From Haliotis rufescens (taxonomy: Eukaryota), in assembly GCF_023055435.1 (NCBI RefSeq), contig NW_025964223.1, positions 49,600,001-49,664,000 on the forward strand: DNA of 64,000 nt. Reading direction: 5' to 3'. This document shows, one piece after another, positions 1 to 64,000 of this stretch (the stretch's first letter is position 1; each line of letters opens with the position of its first letter). Under the pieces are notes generated by a model, which saw only the letters and a list, made by a program, of their open reading frames with translations, had not been told where the DNA came from and did no database searches. The position numbers and the translations under genes are program-made.

Positions 1-80
1 GCGGCAGCCTTCTTAGGCTTGGCAGCAGCCTTCTTCTTGGGAGTCTTGACAACAGCGGGGGCAGCAGCAGCATCAGCCAT
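1..80 (-). CDS. H1: Histone H1, 5' part only (truncated by window edge)
   Basis: CAT at 78-80; encodes [26 protein letters not shown], identical to the full copies. Confidence 0.95.
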   Translation of the reverse strand, partial: MADAAAAPAVVKTPKKKAAAKPKKAA

Positions 81-136
81 AGTGGTAAGTTTGAGTGGTA
101 AAAATTCACGTCAGCTACGAGAGAAGCACAGAGAGC

Positions 137-250
137 GAATGACACTTCCCCACAGACAGCCCGGCTGATACTCCGGAGGCGCGGACGTCGGAGGAGACAC
201 CCTGCTTGTTGTGGCTGATAGCTGCACGCTTACAAGCGCGTGTGCTTTTT
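137..250 (-). promoter_or_regulatory. H1 proximal promoter (same in every unit): TCATTC cap/Inr, degenerate TATA (TATCAG), H4-box-like GTCCGC, H1-box-like AAGCACAC
   Basis: Minus strand: TCATTC at 142-137; GTATCAGCC ~28 nt upstream (171-163); ACGTCCGC (188-181); AAAAAGCACAC (250-240). Motif assignments are by eye. Confidence 0.5.
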
Positions 251-1147
251 CGTGTATTTGTATCCGAATAATCACTTCTTAATCAAGGAAAGTTTCAATT
301 TCAACAATACAGTTAGGTAGTAAAAACATTTGGCTACATTTCGGTTACAATAGCAACGCTCACGGGTGAAGTTCAAAGCCACACGTGCTGTTTCCAATGA
401 AGCGACCAAGTCTAAAATGTAGACATCGCTACTTTCAAAAGCACATTTTTAGCCTTGAGACTCAAGTTTATGCATTTTAAACGTTGCCTGTCAATTCTCA
501 ATATATATAACTATGAAAGTAAAACACAACACTCATCAGTATTGCCTATGATAAGCTAGAACAAGCTTTCAAACAACGACAATGAAGCACGTTTTTCTGA
601 CGACTTCGCCATTTTGCAACAGAAAACATTTGACACTATATTTCTGGAGACATAATTTTGGTCACTTCAATTAGAGTTGAAACTAACTTTGTCATAACAA
701 GTAAGTAACGGGGATTTTACTTTCAGGAAAACAGTCTAGTAAGACGAGGATCTCGGGACACAAGCAGCTAGGGCGCGAAGCCCCGAACAGTAACATATAT
801 ACATTGGTGTTTAGATCACTCGATCGGTCGTCACAGATTAAGTCTTTTTGCCTGTCTTAATAGCACGATATTAGTAGGGGTCTTCGTCGTTTGGATGTTA
901 ATTTTACCAGAACAATATAGGCTACCATCCATCAACGAAAAGTGAATGTTTCAGACGAAAGGCCGGATCGAGTGAGCGAGTGTGCCGGGCCTCGTGTTAA
1001 ACAGTGATCACATGTTTTTAGAACGGCTAGATTTTAATCCCTGTAAATATACATCATAAATCAACAAACACAACATGTCTACTGAACCCGCTGAAAACGC
1101 GAGCATGCTGTTTTCATGGCAATGTCTGTTTACCAATGTGTGGTGGC

Positions 1148-1152
1148 TATAT
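1148..1152 (+). promoter_or_regulatory. TATA-like element at -31..-27 of the 5S gene (all units; TATTT in unit 2)
   Basis: GCTATATGTAGC sits at the usual upstream position for invertebrate 5S genes. Confidence 0.6.
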
Positions 1153-1178
1153 GTAGCTAAAGTTTGCCGACAAGCATT

Positions 1179-59663: not shown

Positions 59664-60227
59664 TTAAGCCTTCTTTGGCTTGACTGCCTTCTTCTTGGGG
59701 GTCTTGACCTTCTTGGGTTTGGCTGCTGCCTTCTTGGGTGTCTTCGCCTTCTTGGGCTTGGCTGCAGCCTTCACCTTCTTTGGTGACTTAGCGGCCTTCT
59801 TAGCGGCTGTTTTGGGTTTCTTGGCAGCAGCTGGCTTCTTGACTTTCTTGGGGGATTTGGCAGCCTTCTTTGGTTTGGCAGCTGCCTTAGCCTTCTTGGG
59901 TTTTTCGTCTTTCTTTGCCTCGCCAAGACGGAATGATCCAGCGGCTCCAGTTCCCTTTGATTGCTTCAGTGCGCCGTTCTTGACTCCATTTTTCAAAGCA
60001 GTCTTGATGCGAGCATTGATGGCCACCTGGTTGTCACCAACCTTGTAGTTGGCCAAGATGTATTTCAGAACAGCCTGTCGGGAAGAACCACCCCTCTCCT
60101 TCAGGGTTGAAATAGCTTTCTTGATCATCTCCAAATAGGTAGGATGTGCGGCAGCCTTCTTAGGCTTGGCAGCAGCCTTCTTCTTGGGAGTCTTGACAAC
60201 AGCGGGGGCAGCAGCAGCATCAGCCAT
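59664..60227 (-). CDS. H1: Histone H1 (unit 20)
   Basis: Identical protein. Confidence 0.98.
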
Positions 60228-61325
60228 AGTGGTAAGTTTGAGTGGTAAAAATTCACGTCAGCTACGAGAGAAGCACAGAGAGCGAATGACACTTCCCCAC
60301 AGACAGCCCGGCTGATACTCCGGAGGCGCGGACGTCGGAGGAGACACCCTGCTTGTTGTGGCTGATAGCTGCACGCTTACAAGCGCGTGTGCTTTTTCGT
60401 GTATTTGTATCCGAATAATCACTTCTTAATCAAGGAAAGTTTCAATTTCAACAATACAGTTAGGTAGTAAAAACATTTGGCTACATTTCGGTTACAATAG
60501 CAACGCTCACGGGTGAAGTTCAAAGCCACACGTGCTGTTTCCAATGAAGCGACCCAGTCTAAAATGTAGACATCGCTACTTTCAAAAGCACATTTTTAGC
60601 CTTGAGACTCAAGTTTATGCATTTTAAACGTTGCCTGTCAATTCTCAATATATCTAACTATGAAAGTAAAACACAACACTCATCAGTATTGCCTATGATA
60701 AGCTAGAACAAGCTTTCAAACAACGACAATGAAGCACGTTTTTCTGACGACTTCGCCATTTTGCAACAGAAAACATTTGACACTATATTTCTGGAGACAT
60801 AATTTTGGTCACTTCAATTAGAGTTGAAACTAACTTTGTCATAACAAGTAAGTAACGGGGATTTTACTTTCAGGAAAACAGTCTAGTAAGACGAGGATCT
60901 CGGGACACAAGCAGCTAGGGCGCGAAGCCCCGAACAGTAACATATATACATTGGTGTTTAGATCACTCGATCGGTCGTCACAGATTAAGTCTTTTTGCCT
61001 GTCTTAATAGCACGATATTAGTAGGGGTCTTCGTCGTTTGGATGTTAATTTAACCAGAACAATATAGGCTACCATCCATCAACGAAAAGTGAATGTTTCA
61101 GACGAAAGGCCGGATCGAGTGAGCGAGTGTGCCGGGCCTCGTGTTAAACAGTGATCACATGTTTTTAGAACGGCTAGATTTTAATCCCTGTAAATATACA
61201 TCATAAATCAACAAACACAACATGTCTACTGAACCCGCTGAAAACGCGAGCATGCTGTTTTCATGGCAATGTCTGTTTACCAATGTGTGGTGGCTATATG
61301 TAGCTAAAGTTTGCCGACAAGCATT

Positions 61326-61445
61326 GTCTACGGCCATACCACGTTGAAAACACCGGTTCTCGTCCGATCACCGAAGTTAAGCAACGTCGGGCCCGGAGAG
61401 TACTTGGATGGGTGACCGCCTGGGAACACCGGGTGCAGTAGACAT
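61326..61445 (+). rRNA. 5S rRNA: 5S rRNA (unit 21)
   Basis: Same as unit 1; 1-bp C insertion in the back-up T tract. Confidence 0.98.
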
Positions 61446-62670
61446 TTTTGCTGTGCGATTCCCACTTTTTTTCCTTTTTCGACCATAAGGTGCACTTGCC
61501 TCATTCACATCTGATGTAATCATACACTTTTATTTCCTTGTAAATGGCCCCACTCATGCATGTCTGCTCAAAGACATAGCTGCCAGCCATGTATTCTTAC
61601 ATACCTTTACAGAAAGGAATTTTCCACTATACATGTGATCATATTCAGTTGTCAGTTCACCCAACTCGTCAACTATTCTGAAGGCATGTACGTCCTTTTC
61701 GCCACATAAAGGTGTTTGCGTGCACCGATAATTGACTATTTTACTTACTTTCTTACTTTCAAAGCATGAATATATAATATATACATGTAAAATTATAATG
61801 TTGTTCGTGTTAAGTCTCGGCTCACATCTCTTTGCCTACACAGATAAGAAAAGGAGAAAGAGTTAGATCGTACAGAGCGCCTGTCAATAGGAGTTCACTG
61901 GCTTGCTGCTGGAAAATGTATTTTGAAAGCTGTGAGCAAGCTGATCACTGTTGACACGCTTTAAAAATATGAAAAAAAAACGACGCGACTGTGTGATAAA
62001 CCAGCTATTTTATGTTCCCCGTTCTAGCTGATCGCTGGCAAACGTACTTTAGACTTATTAGAAAGTATTTCCATACATTTCTCTCGCCATACAACAGGTA
62101 GATGTGACATGTTGCAGGTAGGGGGCTAGGCGAAACGCACACGACCAAGGGCGCACAACTCTTGGCGCTCTATTTGAAAAGTCGTGCACAGGCGAGGCGT
62201 GTGTCGGTAAAACACCCCGTGGATGTCTGGCCTTTATCGCCGTTTTACACCTTTGAACACAACGTGCATGTGCAGCTACACACATAGGAAGTCTGCACTC
62301 AGGATATTATATATATCAACGACACTAATCGCCTCACTTTCCAACATACACCCATTTGGGGGGTTAATAAACAAGCATAACAACAGTCATTAGTGTGAAG
62401 ACACACTACCCCACCCCCCCATCCCCCCCCACACACACAATAAAATCCCTGACATACCTTTATCAACATCACCTATGTGTGTTATGTGCGTGGTGGGTGT
62501 TGCTGCCACGTTATCTCTGTTATCACGAGAACCTGCACTTTATTACTGCTAATATACATATTTATTGTTTTGTTATCAGTGTTTTCAAGTTTTCTTTTGG
62601 GGTATTTAGATGGCCCTGAAAAGGGCCTTTGGACCACAGAAATGTGGAGCGAAGGCGTGACAATGAGAGC

Positions 62671-63234
62671 TTAAGCCTTCTTTGGCTTGACTGCCTTCTT
62701 CTTGGGGGTCTTGACCTTCTTGGGTTTGGCTGCTGCCTTCTTGGGTGTCTTCGCCTTCTTGGGCTTGGCTGCAGCCTTCACCTTCTTTGGTGACTTAGCG
62801 GCCTTCTTAGCGGCTGTTTTGGGTTTCTTGGCAGCAGCTGGCTTCTTGACTTTCTTGGGGGATTTGGCAGCCTTCTTTGGTTTGGCAGCTGCCTTAGCCT
62901 TCTTGGGTTTTTCGTCTTTCTTTGCCTCGCCAAGACGGAATGATCCAGCGGCTCCAGTTCCCTTTGATTGCTTCAGTGCGCCGTTCTTGACTCCATTTTT
63001 CAAAGCAGTCTTGATGCGAGCATTGATGGCCACCTGGTTGTCACCAACCTTGTAGTTGGCCAAGATGTATTTCAGAACAGCCTGTCGGGAAGAACCACCC
63101 CTCTCCTTCAGGGTTGAAATAGCTTTCTTGATCATCTCCAAATAGGTAGGATGTGCGGCAGCCTTCTTAGGCTTGGCAGCAGCCTTCTTCTTGGGAGTCT
63201 TGACAACAGCGGGGGCAGCAGCAGCATCAGCCAT
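62671..63234 (-). CDS. H1: Histone H1 (unit 21)
   Basis: Identical protein. Confidence 0.98.
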
Positions 63235-64000
63235 AGTGGTAAGTTTGAGTGGTAAAAATTCACGTCAGCTACGAGAGAAGCACAGAGAGCGAATGACACT
63301 TCCCCACAGACAGCCCGGCTGATACTCCGGAGGCGCGGACGTCGGAGGAGACACCCTGCTTGTTGTGGCTGATAGCTGCACGCTTACAAGCGCGTGTGCT
63401 TTTTCGTGTATTTGTATCCGAATAATCACTTCTTAATCAAGGAAAGTTTCAATTTCAACAATACAGTTAGGTAGTAAAAACATTTGGCTACATTTCGGTT
63501 ACAATAGCAACGCTCACGGGTGAAGTTCAAAGCCACACGTGCTGTTTCCAATGAAGCGACCCAGTCTAAAATGTAGACATCGCTACTTTCAAAAGCACAT
63601 TTTTAGCCTTGAGACTCAAGTTTATGCATTTTAAACGTTGCCTGTCAATTCTCAATATATCTAACTATGAAAGTAAAACACAACACTCATCAGTATTGCC
63701 TATGATAAGCTAGAACAAGCTTTCAAACAACGACAATGAAGCACGTTTTTCTGACGACTTCGCCATTTTGCAACAGAAAACATTTGACACTATATTTCTG
63801 GAGACATAATTTTGGTCACTTCAATTAGAGTTGAAACTAACTTTGTCATAACAAGTAAGTAACGGGGATTTTACTTTCAGGAAAACAGTCTAGTAAGACG
63901 AGGATCTCGGGACACAAGCAGCTAGGGCGCGAAGCCCCGAACAGTAACATATATACATTGGTGTTTAGATCACTCGATCGGTCGTCACAGATTAAGTCTT

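What the first reader, a model, noticed from the sequence alone, without database searches (positions are those of the whole stretch)
1..64000. Two-gene tandem array: linker histone H1 co-amplified 1:1 with 5S rRNA, with no core histones
Seen: every ~3006-bp unit holds one 5S gene (+) and one H1 gene (-), divergent across ~1.1 kb and convergent across ~1.2 kb. No H2A/H2B/H3/H4 occurs in 21 units. Known: 5S genes occur inside complete histone repeats in mussels (Mytilus) and some crustaceans (e.g. Artemia), and H1-only 'orphon' tandem clusters are described in Mytilus. I do not know of a described H1-only + 5S repeat, but cannot search. Inference: a Pol II protein gene and a Pol III RNA gene have locked copy number and evolve in concert. 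H1 is also the established chromatin repressor of oocyte-type 5S genes in Xenopus, so the unit might encode a regulator of its own neighbour. Hitch-hiking of 5S on another repeat is the null explanation.
Basis: partly seen in the sequence, partly recalled or inferred. Interest (0 to 1): 0.8.

Follow-up and report, generated by a model that had tools for sequence, protein, structure and literature searches.

The report
Abalone H1 histone–5S rRNA gene array
In the red abalone genome about 110 copies of a 3-kb unit, each with one linker-histone H1 gene and one 5S rRNA gene, form a single 565-kb array; it is real and expressed, but is best read as another case of 5S genes riding on other tandem repeats, already seen by microscopy in mussels.

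Summary
The window holds 21 units of about 3,006 bp, 99.6-100% identical. Each has a full 5S rRNA gene (+) and an intact 187-aa H1 gene with a histone 3' stem-loop (-), and no core histones.

The window is part of a 565-kb array on a 63-Mb scaffold of Haliotis rufescens, with 112 5S and about 110 H1 genes in strict alternation. Core histones sit elsewhere as about 199 H3/H2A/H2B/H4 quartets without H1 or 5S.

The array is not the only home of 5S. A second 5S class lies antisense in the 45S rDNA spacer. It differs at 16 of 119 bases, with four compensatory pairs. No free-standing 5S array was found.

Small-RNA reads hit only 5S (sense) and H1 (sense). Assembled contigs (not raw reads) from runs under two other species labels show the same tandem unit.

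Two separate 5S linkages in one genome favour the null reading: 5S was captured by other repeats and homogenised with them. Nothing supports H1 regulating its neighbour.

Alternating H1 and 5S signals without core histones were reported by fibre-FISH in Mytilus in 2014 (PMC4106214), so this is a new, sequence-resolved member of a known kind. The scan noted this same array in neighbouring windows (s1-813743, s1-812730).

The parts
1..64000 (.). 21 units (the first and last cut by the window) of the ~3,006-bp H1 + 5S tandem repeat. This is part of a 565-kb array at G000:C445:49,271,766-49,836,861.
1148..1153 (+). TATA-like TATATG at -31..-26 of 5S (unit 1). The same 40-nt upstream sequence is found in 20 of 21 units.
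   Evidence: Its role as a Pol III upstream element is inferred.
1179..1297 (+). 5S rRNA gene, unit 1
   Evidence: RF00001, 111.5 bits, model positions 1-120
1298..1302 (+). T5 run directly after the 5S gene, read as the Pol III terminator. It is present in all 21 units.
   Evidence: An adapter follows the equivalent base (4303) in 3 small-RNA reads.
2441..2452 (-). Purine-rich CCAAAAGAAAAC, 12 nt downstream of the stem-loop; a candidate histone downstream element.
   Evidence: assigned by sequence inspection only
2439..2484 (-). Histone 3' stem-loop of H1, unit 1 (core GGCCCTTTTCAGGGCC at 2464-2479)
   Evidence: RF00032, 39.9 bits
2523..3086 (-). H1 coding sequence, unit 1 (187 aa, no intron)
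4185..4303 (+). 5S gene, unit 2
5438..6085 (-). H1 gene (stem-loop to ATG), unit 2
7184..7302 (+). 5S gene, unit 3 (variant, 108.9 bits)
8449..9096 (-). H1 gene, unit 3
10195..10313 (+). 5S gene, unit 4
11475..12122 (-). H1 gene, unit 4
13221..13339 (+). 5S gene, unit 5
14483..15130 (-). H1 gene, unit 5
16229..16347 (+). 5S gene, unit 6
17490..18137 (-). H1 gene, unit 6
19236..19354 (+). 5S gene, unit 7
20496..21143 (-). H1 gene, unit 7
22242..22360 (+). 5S gene, unit 8
23502..24149 (-). H1 gene, unit 8
25248..25366 (+). 5S gene, unit 9
26508..27155 (-). H1 gene, unit 9
28254..28372 (+). 5S gene, unit 10
29515..30162 (-). H1 gene, unit 10
31261..31379 (+). 5S gene, unit 11
32521..33168 (-). 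H1 gene, unit 11
34267..34385 (+). 5S gene, unit 12 (variant, 105.6 bits)
35527..36174 (-). H1 gene, unit 12
37273..37391 (+). 5S gene, unit 13
38533..39180 (-). H1 gene, unit 13
40279..40397 (+). 5S gene, unit 14
41540..42187 (-). H1 gene, unit 14
43286..43404 (+). 5S gene, unit 15
44548..45195 (-). H1 gene, unit 15
46294..46412 (+). 5S gene, unit 16
47556..48203 (-). H1 gene, unit 16
49302..49420 (+). 5S gene, unit 17 (variant, 103.3 bits)
50562..51209 (-). H1 gene, unit 17
52308..52426 (+). 5S gene, unit 18
53568..54215 (-). H1 gene, unit 18
55314..55432 (+). 5S gene, unit 19
56574..57221 (-). H1 gene, unit 19
58320..58438 (+). 5S gene, unit 20
59580..60227 (-). H1 gene, unit 20
61326..61444 (+). 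5S gene, unit 21
62587..63234 (-). H1 gene, unit 21 (stem-loop 38.8 bits)

Best explanation
This is the main replication-dependent linker-histone H1 gene array of the red abalone (Haliotis rufescens). A 5S rRNA gene was captured into its repeat unit. The composite 3.0-kb unit was then amplified and kept uniform by unequal crossing-over and gene conversion, giving about 110 copies over 565 kb at one locus. The two genes work independently. 5S appears to be a self-contained Pol III gene: it has a full-length conserved sequence, a TATA-like box near -30 and a T5 terminator. H1 appears to be an intron-less Pol II gene ending in the histone stem-loop with a purine-rich downstream element. The 1:1 copy number and concerted evolution follow simply from sharing one repeat unit. 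No regulatory link between the genes is needed. In this genome every 5S gene found rides on another tandem family, either H1 (112 copies) or the 45S rDNA spacer. Shown: anatomy, copy number, alternation, sense-strand reads from both genes, and presence in two other species labels. Inferred: capture, homogenisation and independence of the two genes.
For: Anatomy and uniformity of the units. Organism: the best protein hit is 98% identical, 'histone 24-like [Haliotis rufescens]', and its longest contig (63,335,689 bp) equals the length of C445. Whole genome: a 50-nt 5S pattern with up to 3 mismatches gives 112 hits. The 100 hits listed all lie in the C445 array, and the 12 unlisted match the 12 genes found by Rfam at the array's right end. 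About 110 Linker_histone hits lie in the same span. 5S and H1 alternate strictly along the array, apart from two 5S-5S adjacencies. Core quartets (H3+, H2A-, H2B+, H4-; 4,129 bp; 199 H3 copies) carry four stem-loops and no 5S or H1. The second 5S class in the rDNA spacer shares only the gene itself with the H1-linked class, with no flanking homology and no histone genes nearby. Expression: in raw small-RNA reads of the same species, + strand reads fall almost only on 5S and - strand reads only on H1. Three reads end at the last 5S base next to the adapter. In run X15 (RNA by the tool's guess only, not shown transcribed), contig depth is 2,234 on 5S and 48-135 on H1, against 0-20 in most spacer bins. 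Independent DNA: 14 runs from 5 studies hold 80-94% of the unit's words. One 2,980-nt assembled contig from organism B covers the whole unit and closes on itself as a tandem joint. Contigs from organism C tile the unit, and one contig runs from the H1 5' flank across the tandem joint into the next 5S gene. None of the 40 listed between-species differences falls in 5S, while the flanks differ by about 2-3%. The literature frames such linkages as 5S invasion of other repeats (PMC4106214, PMC13525598, PMC8382920).
Against: Capture and neutral maintenance are inferred, not shown. Linkage was only tested in close relatives (about 2-3% divergent), because the tool that fetches contigs of other species was closed. 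A long-conserved linkage would therefore not have been detected. That no free 5S array was found means the H1-linked genes are probably a main 5S source, so the linkage may be under selection. The H1 promoter and start site were not resolved, and no canonical TATAAA was seen upstream. The small-RNA evidence is thin (41 reads). At the 88% threshold used, some 5S reads could come from the rDNA-linked class.
Confidence: 0.7

Rival explanations
1. Co-amplification is selected because of shared developmental demand. On this reading the H1-5S array is a maternal or early-embryonic supply locus. The two 5S classes (H1-linked and rDNA-linked) would be used at different stages, like the oocyte and somatic 5S of Xenopus or the oocyte-specific rDNA-embedded 5S of turtles.
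For: Two 5S classes differ at 16 of 119 positions, with four fully compensatory pair changes and none broken. Both score above 105 bits and both have T-run terminators, so both look functional. High-copy tandem H1 with a stem-loop coexists with three stem-loop-less single-copy H1 paralogues that are 59-60% identical. This recalls the early/late histone gene sets of sea urchins (from my own knowledge). A turtle precedent for a stage-specific rDNA-embedded 5S exists (PMC8789306).
Against: No stage- or tissue-resolved expression was examined. Two functional paralogous classes are also expected from two independently homogenised arrays without any division of labour.
Confidence: 0.17
2. Regulatory feedback: the H1 encoded in the unit acts as a chromatin repressor of its own neighbouring 5S gene, so the unit encodes a regulator of itself.
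For: Only the analogy with H1-dependent repression of Xenopus oocyte-type 5S genes (established knowledge), together with the physical adjacency.
Against: H1 is a diffusible, genome-wide chromatin protein, so cis-linkage gives no obvious specificity. The protein is an ordinary somatic-type H1 with S/TPKK motifs. The second 5S class is linked to rDNA, not to H1. The Mytilus authors likewise saw no functional advantage.
Confidence: 0.05
3. Assembly artefact: a few units were falsely expanded or mis-joined.
For: Tandem arrays are error-prone in assemblies. The core-histone and rDNA arrays of this assembly are fragmented or cut at contig ends.
Against: Units carry private SNPs, indels (unit lengths 2,999-3,026 bp) and 20 larger gaps between neighbouring H1 genes, mostly in the left part of the array. 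This is as expected of a resolved array. Unique flanks lie on both sides. Short-read contigs from other studies and species close on themselves at about 2,980-2,999 bp, showing a head-to-tail arrangement.
Confidence: 0.03

Closest known systems
Interspersed linker-histone H1 and 5S rDNA on Mytilus chromosome 1 (Perez-Garcia et al. 2014, PMC4106214)
   Same: H1 and 5S genes alternate at one locus with no core-histone signal. Separate core-histone clusters lack H1. The authors interpret it as 5S invasion with no obvious functional advantage.
   Different: The Mytilus case is known only from fibre-FISH: there is no unit sequence, orientation or copy number. It is a bivalve, not a gastropod. Mytilus also has 5S clusters free of H1 and H1-only clusters, whereas here no free 5S array was found and the array holds nearly all H1 copies. 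Homology of the two arrangements is untested.
Histone quintet + 5S repeats (Artemia; Mytilus galloprovincialis, Eirin-Lopez 2004) and core quartet + 5S (Asellus)
   Same: A 5S gene sits inside a tandemly repeated histone unit, and Pol II and Pol III genes are homogenised together.
   Different: Those units contain the core histones. Here the unit has H1 only, and the quartets have no 5S.
5S genes embedded in the 45S rDNA spacer (Potamopyrgus, turtles/crocodiles, notothenioid fish, yeasts)
   Same: The same genome also has this arrangement: one antisense 5S per rDNA unit, about 4 kb from both 28S and 18S. Its sequence is divergent but structurally compensated, as in the turtle case.
   Different: That is the other 5S class, not the one in the window. 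No histone genes lie in the abalone rDNA spacer, unlike Potamopyrgus.
Xenopus oocyte/somatic 5S genes repressed by H1
   Same: There are two 5S sequence classes in one genome, and H1 is involved in the story.
   Different: In Xenopus the H1 gene is not linked to 5S, and the link is through chromatin in trans. Nothing here shows differential expression or H1 dependence.

Membership tests
5S rRNA gene (Rfam RF00001; Pol III type 1 gene) | Covariance-model score above the gathering cut-off over the full model | tested here: met
   103.3-111.5 bits against a cut-off of 38, model positions 1-120, in all 21 copies
5S rRNA gene (Rfam RF00001; Pol III type 1 gene) | Run of T directly downstream as terminator | tested here: met
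   TTTTT starts at the base after the gene in 21 of 21 units. Small-RNA reads end at the last gene base.
5S rRNA gene (Rfam RF00001; Pol III type 1 gene) | Transcribed | tested here: met
   Sense-strand small-RNA reads fall on 5S and almost none on the spacers. Contig depth is 2,234 on 5S in X15, a run whose RNA label is the tool's guess. Caveat: some reads may derive from the rDNA-linked class.
5S rRNA gene (Rfam RF00001; Pol III type 1 gene) | Internal control region bound by TFIIIA | not testable with these tools
   Only sequence conservation over the model is available.
Replication-dependent linker histone H1 (Pfam PF00538) | Globular winged-helix Linker_histone domain | tested here: met
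   E=2.2e-29, 101.9 bits, residues 28-102, profile positions 1-74 of 74
Replication-dependent linker histone H1 (Pfam PF00538) | Lysine/alanine/proline-rich C-terminal tail with S/TPKK motifs | tested here: met
   Read directly from the translation: KSPKK twice and TPKK three times
Replication-dependent linker histone H1 (Pfam PF00538) | Histone 3' stem-loop instead of a poly(A) signal; no intron | tested here: met
   RF00032 at 38.8-39.9 bits, 39 nt after the stop codon in all 21 units. The ORF is uninterrupted.
Replication-dependent linker histone H1 (Pfam PF00538) | Histone downstream element for U7 snRNP | tested here: inconclusive
   A purine-rich CCAAAAGAAAAC lies 12 nt after the stem-loop. 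No model or U7 pairing test was run.
Replication-dependent linker histone H1 (Pfam PF00538) | S-phase-coupled expression | not testable with these tools
   Only sense-strand fragments in small-RNA reads were seen.
[quoted passage not shown] | One 5S gene per unit of a tandem repeat that encodes another multigene family, homogenised with it | tested here: met
   Alternation holds over about 110 units, which are 99.6-100% identical in the window.
Mytilus-type H1/5S interspersed array | Alternating H1 and 5S with no core histones at the locus | tested here: met
   compared with the description in PMC4106214
Mytilus-type H1/5S interspersed array | Common descent with the Mytilus arrangement (same orientation, homologous spacers) | not tested
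Histone quintet + 5S repeat (Artemia / M. galloprovincialis type) | H2A, H2B, H3 and H4 in the same unit as H1 and 5S | tested here: not met
   No tblastn hit of the genome's own core histones in the window at E<=10
Dual (oocyte/somatic-like) 5S system | Two structurally intact 5S sequence classes in one genome | tested here: met
   16 of 119 differences, 4 compensatory pairs, none broken; 111.5 and 105.2 bits
Dual (oocyte/somatic-like) 5S system | Stage- or tissue-specific use of the two classes | not tested

The most novel reading that the evidence does not exclude
Red abalone has no free-standing 5S rDNA. Its 5S genes exist only as two structurally compensated classes, each embedded in another tandem family: the H1 array and the 45S rDNA spacer. 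The two classes are deployed differently in development. The H1-5S array would then act as a joint maternal or embryonic supply locus, so the linkage would be maintained by selection rather than by drift.
Probability: 0.15. Interest if true: 0.65.

Novelty: new member of a known kind. Interest (0 to 1): 0.4.

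Why it matters
A 2026 review of histone gene organisation (PMC13525598) calls it a major open question how loci that mix histone and rRNA genes reconcile S-phase-restricted Pol II transcription with constitutive Pol III or Pol I transcription and their nuclear bodies. 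For the few well-described cases it lists only quartet or quintet units alternating with rRNA genes. The abalone array is the simplest such system seen here: two genes, 3 kb, about 110 near-identical copies, fully assembled, and physically separate from the core-histone arrays. It allows direct tests: does a histone locus body form on an H1-only array, does it coexist with Pol III factories, and what does it mean for a genome to keep all of its 5S genes as passengers of other repeats. It also gives a sequence-level counterpart to the Mytilus fibre-FISH result, so common origin versus convergence in molluscs becomes testable.

Tried and rejected
- TRF found no array because its longest period is 500 bp. 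Periodicity was taken from the Rfam coordinates and MAFFT instead.
- The whole-genome RF00001 search scored only 47 of about 47,800 rough candidates, so it could not show whether 5S occurs elsewhere. Exact-pattern counts replaced it. 5S copies more than 3 mismatches away from both patterns would still be missed.
I could therefore not fetch the contigs of the nearest H1 relatives: P0002-P0006, 79-82% identical over 55% of the query, on contigs of 1.6-3.4 kb (three of them 3.1-3.4 kb). The same applies to Gigantopelta, Patella, Lottia, Aplysia and Mytilus. Deep conservation of the linkage stays untested.
- As a proxy I searched the spurious 69-aa ORF antisense to 5S, hoping to find it on contigs of the same lengths as those H1 relatives. 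None matched.
- Metagenome contigs with H1 relatives (45 loci) mostly show H1 next to core histones. One has a quintet plus 5S (L050), and none has H1 + 5S alone. The sample is small and taxonomically anonymous.
- Other RNAs in the spacers: none, even at E<=1.
- Spacer ORFs of 60-75 aa: no Pfam match; I treat them as chance ORFs.
- Copying of one 5S class from the other together with flanks: rejected, since homology stops within 4 nt of the gene.
- Histone genes in the rDNA spacer, as in Potamopyrgus: none.

Full report
**1. The observation**

Rfam at gathering thresholds finds exactly 21 full-length 5S rRNA genes on the + strand and 21 histone 3' stem-loops on the - strand, and nothing else. 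A permissive scan of one unit at E<=1 adds nothing.

Each unit has an uninterrupted 187-aa ORF on the - strand. It carries a complete Linker_histone domain (PF00538, E=2e-29). All 21 ORFs are intact: 19 are identical and 2 differ by one residue.

Units are 2,999-3,026 bp long. The 20 whole units are 99.6-100% identical, and the main indel hot spot is a poly-C tract. The window has no N.

There are 1,225 bp from the 5S end to the H1 stop codon (convergent) and 1,098 bp from the H1 ATG to the next 5S (divergent). The genome's own H2A, H2B, H3 and H4 give no tblastn hit in the window even at E<=10.

**2. Organism and extent of the array**

The best protein relative is 98% identical and is named 'histone 24-like [Haliotis rufescens]'. 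Its longest contig, 63,335,689 bp, is exactly the length of contig C445 that holds the window. The genome is therefore red abalone, a lead first given by an earlier scan note.

Unit-like sequence runs from C445:49,271,766 to 49,836,861, about 565 kb, with unique flanks on both sides.

A 50-nt 5S pattern with up to 3 mismatches has 112 matches in the 1.33-Gb assembly. The 100 matches listed all lie in this array, and the 12 unlisted correspond to the 12 5S genes that Rfam finds at the array's right end. About 110 Linker_histone matches lie in the same span.

Sorted by position, 5S and H1 alternate strictly, apart from two 5S-5S adjacencies. Of the 100 listed 5S genes, 85 have H1 at the canonical offset. 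Twenty gaps between neighbouring H1 genes fall outside the unit range of 2.9-3.1 kb: one is short (2.5 kb) and 19 are larger (4.9-79 kb). Most lie in the left part of the array and probably mark insertions. Earlier scan notes describe retrotransposons there; I did not pursue them.

**3. The rest of the histone and 5S complement**

Core histones form 4,129-bp quartets (H3+, H2A-, H2B+, H4-). Each gene has its own stem-loop, and the units carry no 5S and no H1. The assembly holds 199 H3 copies of this type. All the copies listed by the tool lie on small unplaced contigs.

Other H1 genes are single copies:
- three paralogues on C112, 59-60% identical, with no stem-loop;
- an arginine-rich variant with a stem-loop, 37% identical;
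- one more distant variant, 38% identical.

The array therefore holds nearly all H1 gene copies.

The array is not the only place with 5S. A pattern over the 3' half of the gene also hit C224 and C368. Rfam shows that these are full 5S genes (105.2 bits) lying antisense in the spacer of the 45S rDNA unit, about 4 kb from both the 28S end and the 18S start.

Only five such copies are assembled, and the four on C224 and C368 lie within 25 kb of a contig start. Their true number is therefore unknown.

This class differs from the H1-linked class at 16 of 119 positions. Four base pairs are changed on both sides and stay paired (18-60, 19-59, 31-46, 69-106), one becomes G-U, and none is broken. The class has its own T-run. 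Similarity between the two classes stops within 4 nt of the gene. The rDNA spacer holds no histone gene.

Within the limits of these patterns, the assembly has no free-standing 5S array.

**4. Signals and expression**

5S signals:
- The same 40 nt upstream, with TATATG at -31 to -26, occurs in 20 of 21 units.
- TTTTT starts at the base after the gene in all units.

H1 signals:
- The canonical stem-loop GGCCCTTTTCAGGGCC lies downstream of the stop codon.
- A purine-rich CCAAAAGAAAAC follows 12 nt further on, a candidate U7 element by inspection only.
- I could not identify a canonical TATA box or the start site.

Reads:
- In raw small-RNA reads of the same species, + strand reads fall almost only on 5S. 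Three of them end at the last gene base next to the adapter.
- Reads on the - strand fall only on H1.
- Only 41 reads were laid, and at the 88% threshold some 5S reads may come from the rDNA class.
- In run X15 the contig depth is 2,234 on 5S and 48-135 on H1, against 0-20 in most spacer bins. That profile does not look like plain DNA. X15 is labelled RNA only by the tool's guess and is not shown to be transcribed, so it is weak support.

Both genes of the unit are thus transcribed in sense, on modest evidence.

**5. Is the array real, and is it shared?**

Fourteen DNA runs from five studies hold 80-94% of the unit's words.

Runs under two other species labels were available only as assembled contigs, not raw reads:
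- In organism B a single 2,980-nt contig covers the whole unit and closes on itself at the tandem joint.
- In organism C three contigs tile the unit, and one runs from the H1 5' flank across the tandem joint into the next 5S gene.

Divergence from the window is about 2-3% in the spacers. None of the 40 listed differences lies in 5S (two further differences in that contig piece were not listed).

The linkage is therefore not an assembly artefact and is shared by close relatives, but that depth of divergence says little about long-term retention.

Deeper tests failed:
- A proxy search through a spurious ORF antisense to 5S gave no matching contigs.
- Anonymous metagenome contigs mostly show H1 next to core histones, with one quintet plus 5S and no H1 + 5S alone.

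**6. Interpretation**

The simplest account is that a 5S gene was captured into the H1 repeat and homogenised with it. Equal copy number and concerted evolution are automatic consequences of sharing a unit.

The same genome shows a second, independent 5S linkage to rDNA. This fits the picture of 5S genes invading other tandem families (Drouin and Moniz de Sa 1995, as cited in PMC4106214, PMC13525598 and PMC8382920).

Nothing supports the idea that the encoded H1 regulates its neighbour. The protein is an ordinary somatic-type H1, and cis-linkage would give a diffusible chromatin protein no specificity.

The more interesting open possibility is that the two structurally intact 5S classes are used at different stages, as in Xenopus or turtles (PMC8789306). 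In that case the high-copy H1-5S array would be a maternal or embryonic supply locus. I put this at roughly 15%.

**7. Novelty**

Perez-Garcia et al. 2014 (PMC4106214) showed alternating 5S and H1 signals by fibre-FISH at a Mytilus chromosome-1 site without core-histone signal.

My library searches found no sequence-level description of such a unit and none for abalone or any gastropod. [quoted passage not shown]

A 5S FISH abstract for H. rufescens exists (Hernandez-Ibarra 2007, cited in PMC4336138), but I could not read it.

I class the finding as a new, sequence-resolved member of a known kind. Its added points are that the genome appears to lack free 5S arrays and carries two compensated 5S classes.

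Noticed in passing
G000:C224:10,344-10,462 and 25,211-25,329; C368:7,830-7,948 and near 23,890; C157 near 76,209 (loci L060-L062): A second, full-length 5S class (105.2 bits) lies antisense in the 45S rDNA intergenic spacer, about 4 kb from both 28S and 18S. It differs at 16 of 119 positions from the H1-linked class, with four compensatory pairs. Only 5 copies are assembled, and those on C224 and C368 lie near contig starts.
   Followed up: yes
G000:C445:49,439,138-49,522,671 (left part of the array, outside the window): A subfamily of H1-linked 5S genes carries a G>T change at about position 86 (GGATGTGTGACC). It occurs in runs of neighbouring units, as do an ACCATACC variant and an AAGATAAGC variant. 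This is local homogenisation, mostly in the insertion-rich left part.
   Followed up: partly
window 6120 and 6157 (equivalent to about 35 and 72 nt upstream of the H1 ATG): Contigs from runs X15 and X17 stop matching the unit here and continue with unrelated sequence. This is consistent with the insertion hot spot just upstream of H1 described by an earlier scan note.
   Followed up: no
G000:C112:48,459,905-48,460,459; 48,472,580-48,473,152; 48,855,797-48,856,339 (L009-L011): Three single-copy H1 paralogues lie within 400 kb of each other. They are 59-60% identical to the array H1 and have no histone stem-loop; two have AATAAA 390-500 nt downstream. They may be polyadenylated, replication-independent or 'late' H1 genes.
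   Followed up: partly
G000:C112:64,725,462-64,726,067 (L013): An arginine-rich 201-aa H1 variant, 37% identical to the array H1, has a canonical histone stem-loop 37 nt after its stop codon. It may be a germ-line or stage-specific linker histone.
   Followed up: no
G000:C110, C170, C174, C191, C213 and other small contigs (L008, L014): Core-histone quartet arrays (4,129-bp unit, 199 H3 copies) lie on small unplaced contigs in all the copies listed. An octanucleotide microsatellite (translating as SLTH repeats) follows H3. The assembled ratio of quartets to H1 units is about 1.8 to 1, but copy numbers are not depth-checked.
   Followed up: partly
window about 2,262-2,290 (alignment columns 1096-1123 of the units): A poly-C / CCCCA tract in the convergent spacer is the main length-polymorphic site between units, and accounts for the 2,999-3,026 bp range.
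   Followed up: no
L050 (metagenome contig Ga0208763_1000665, 6,634 bp): An anonymous marine contig carries H4, H2B, H2A, H1 and H3 plus a 5S gene: a quintet + 5S unit of the Artemia/Mytilus type.
   Followed up: no
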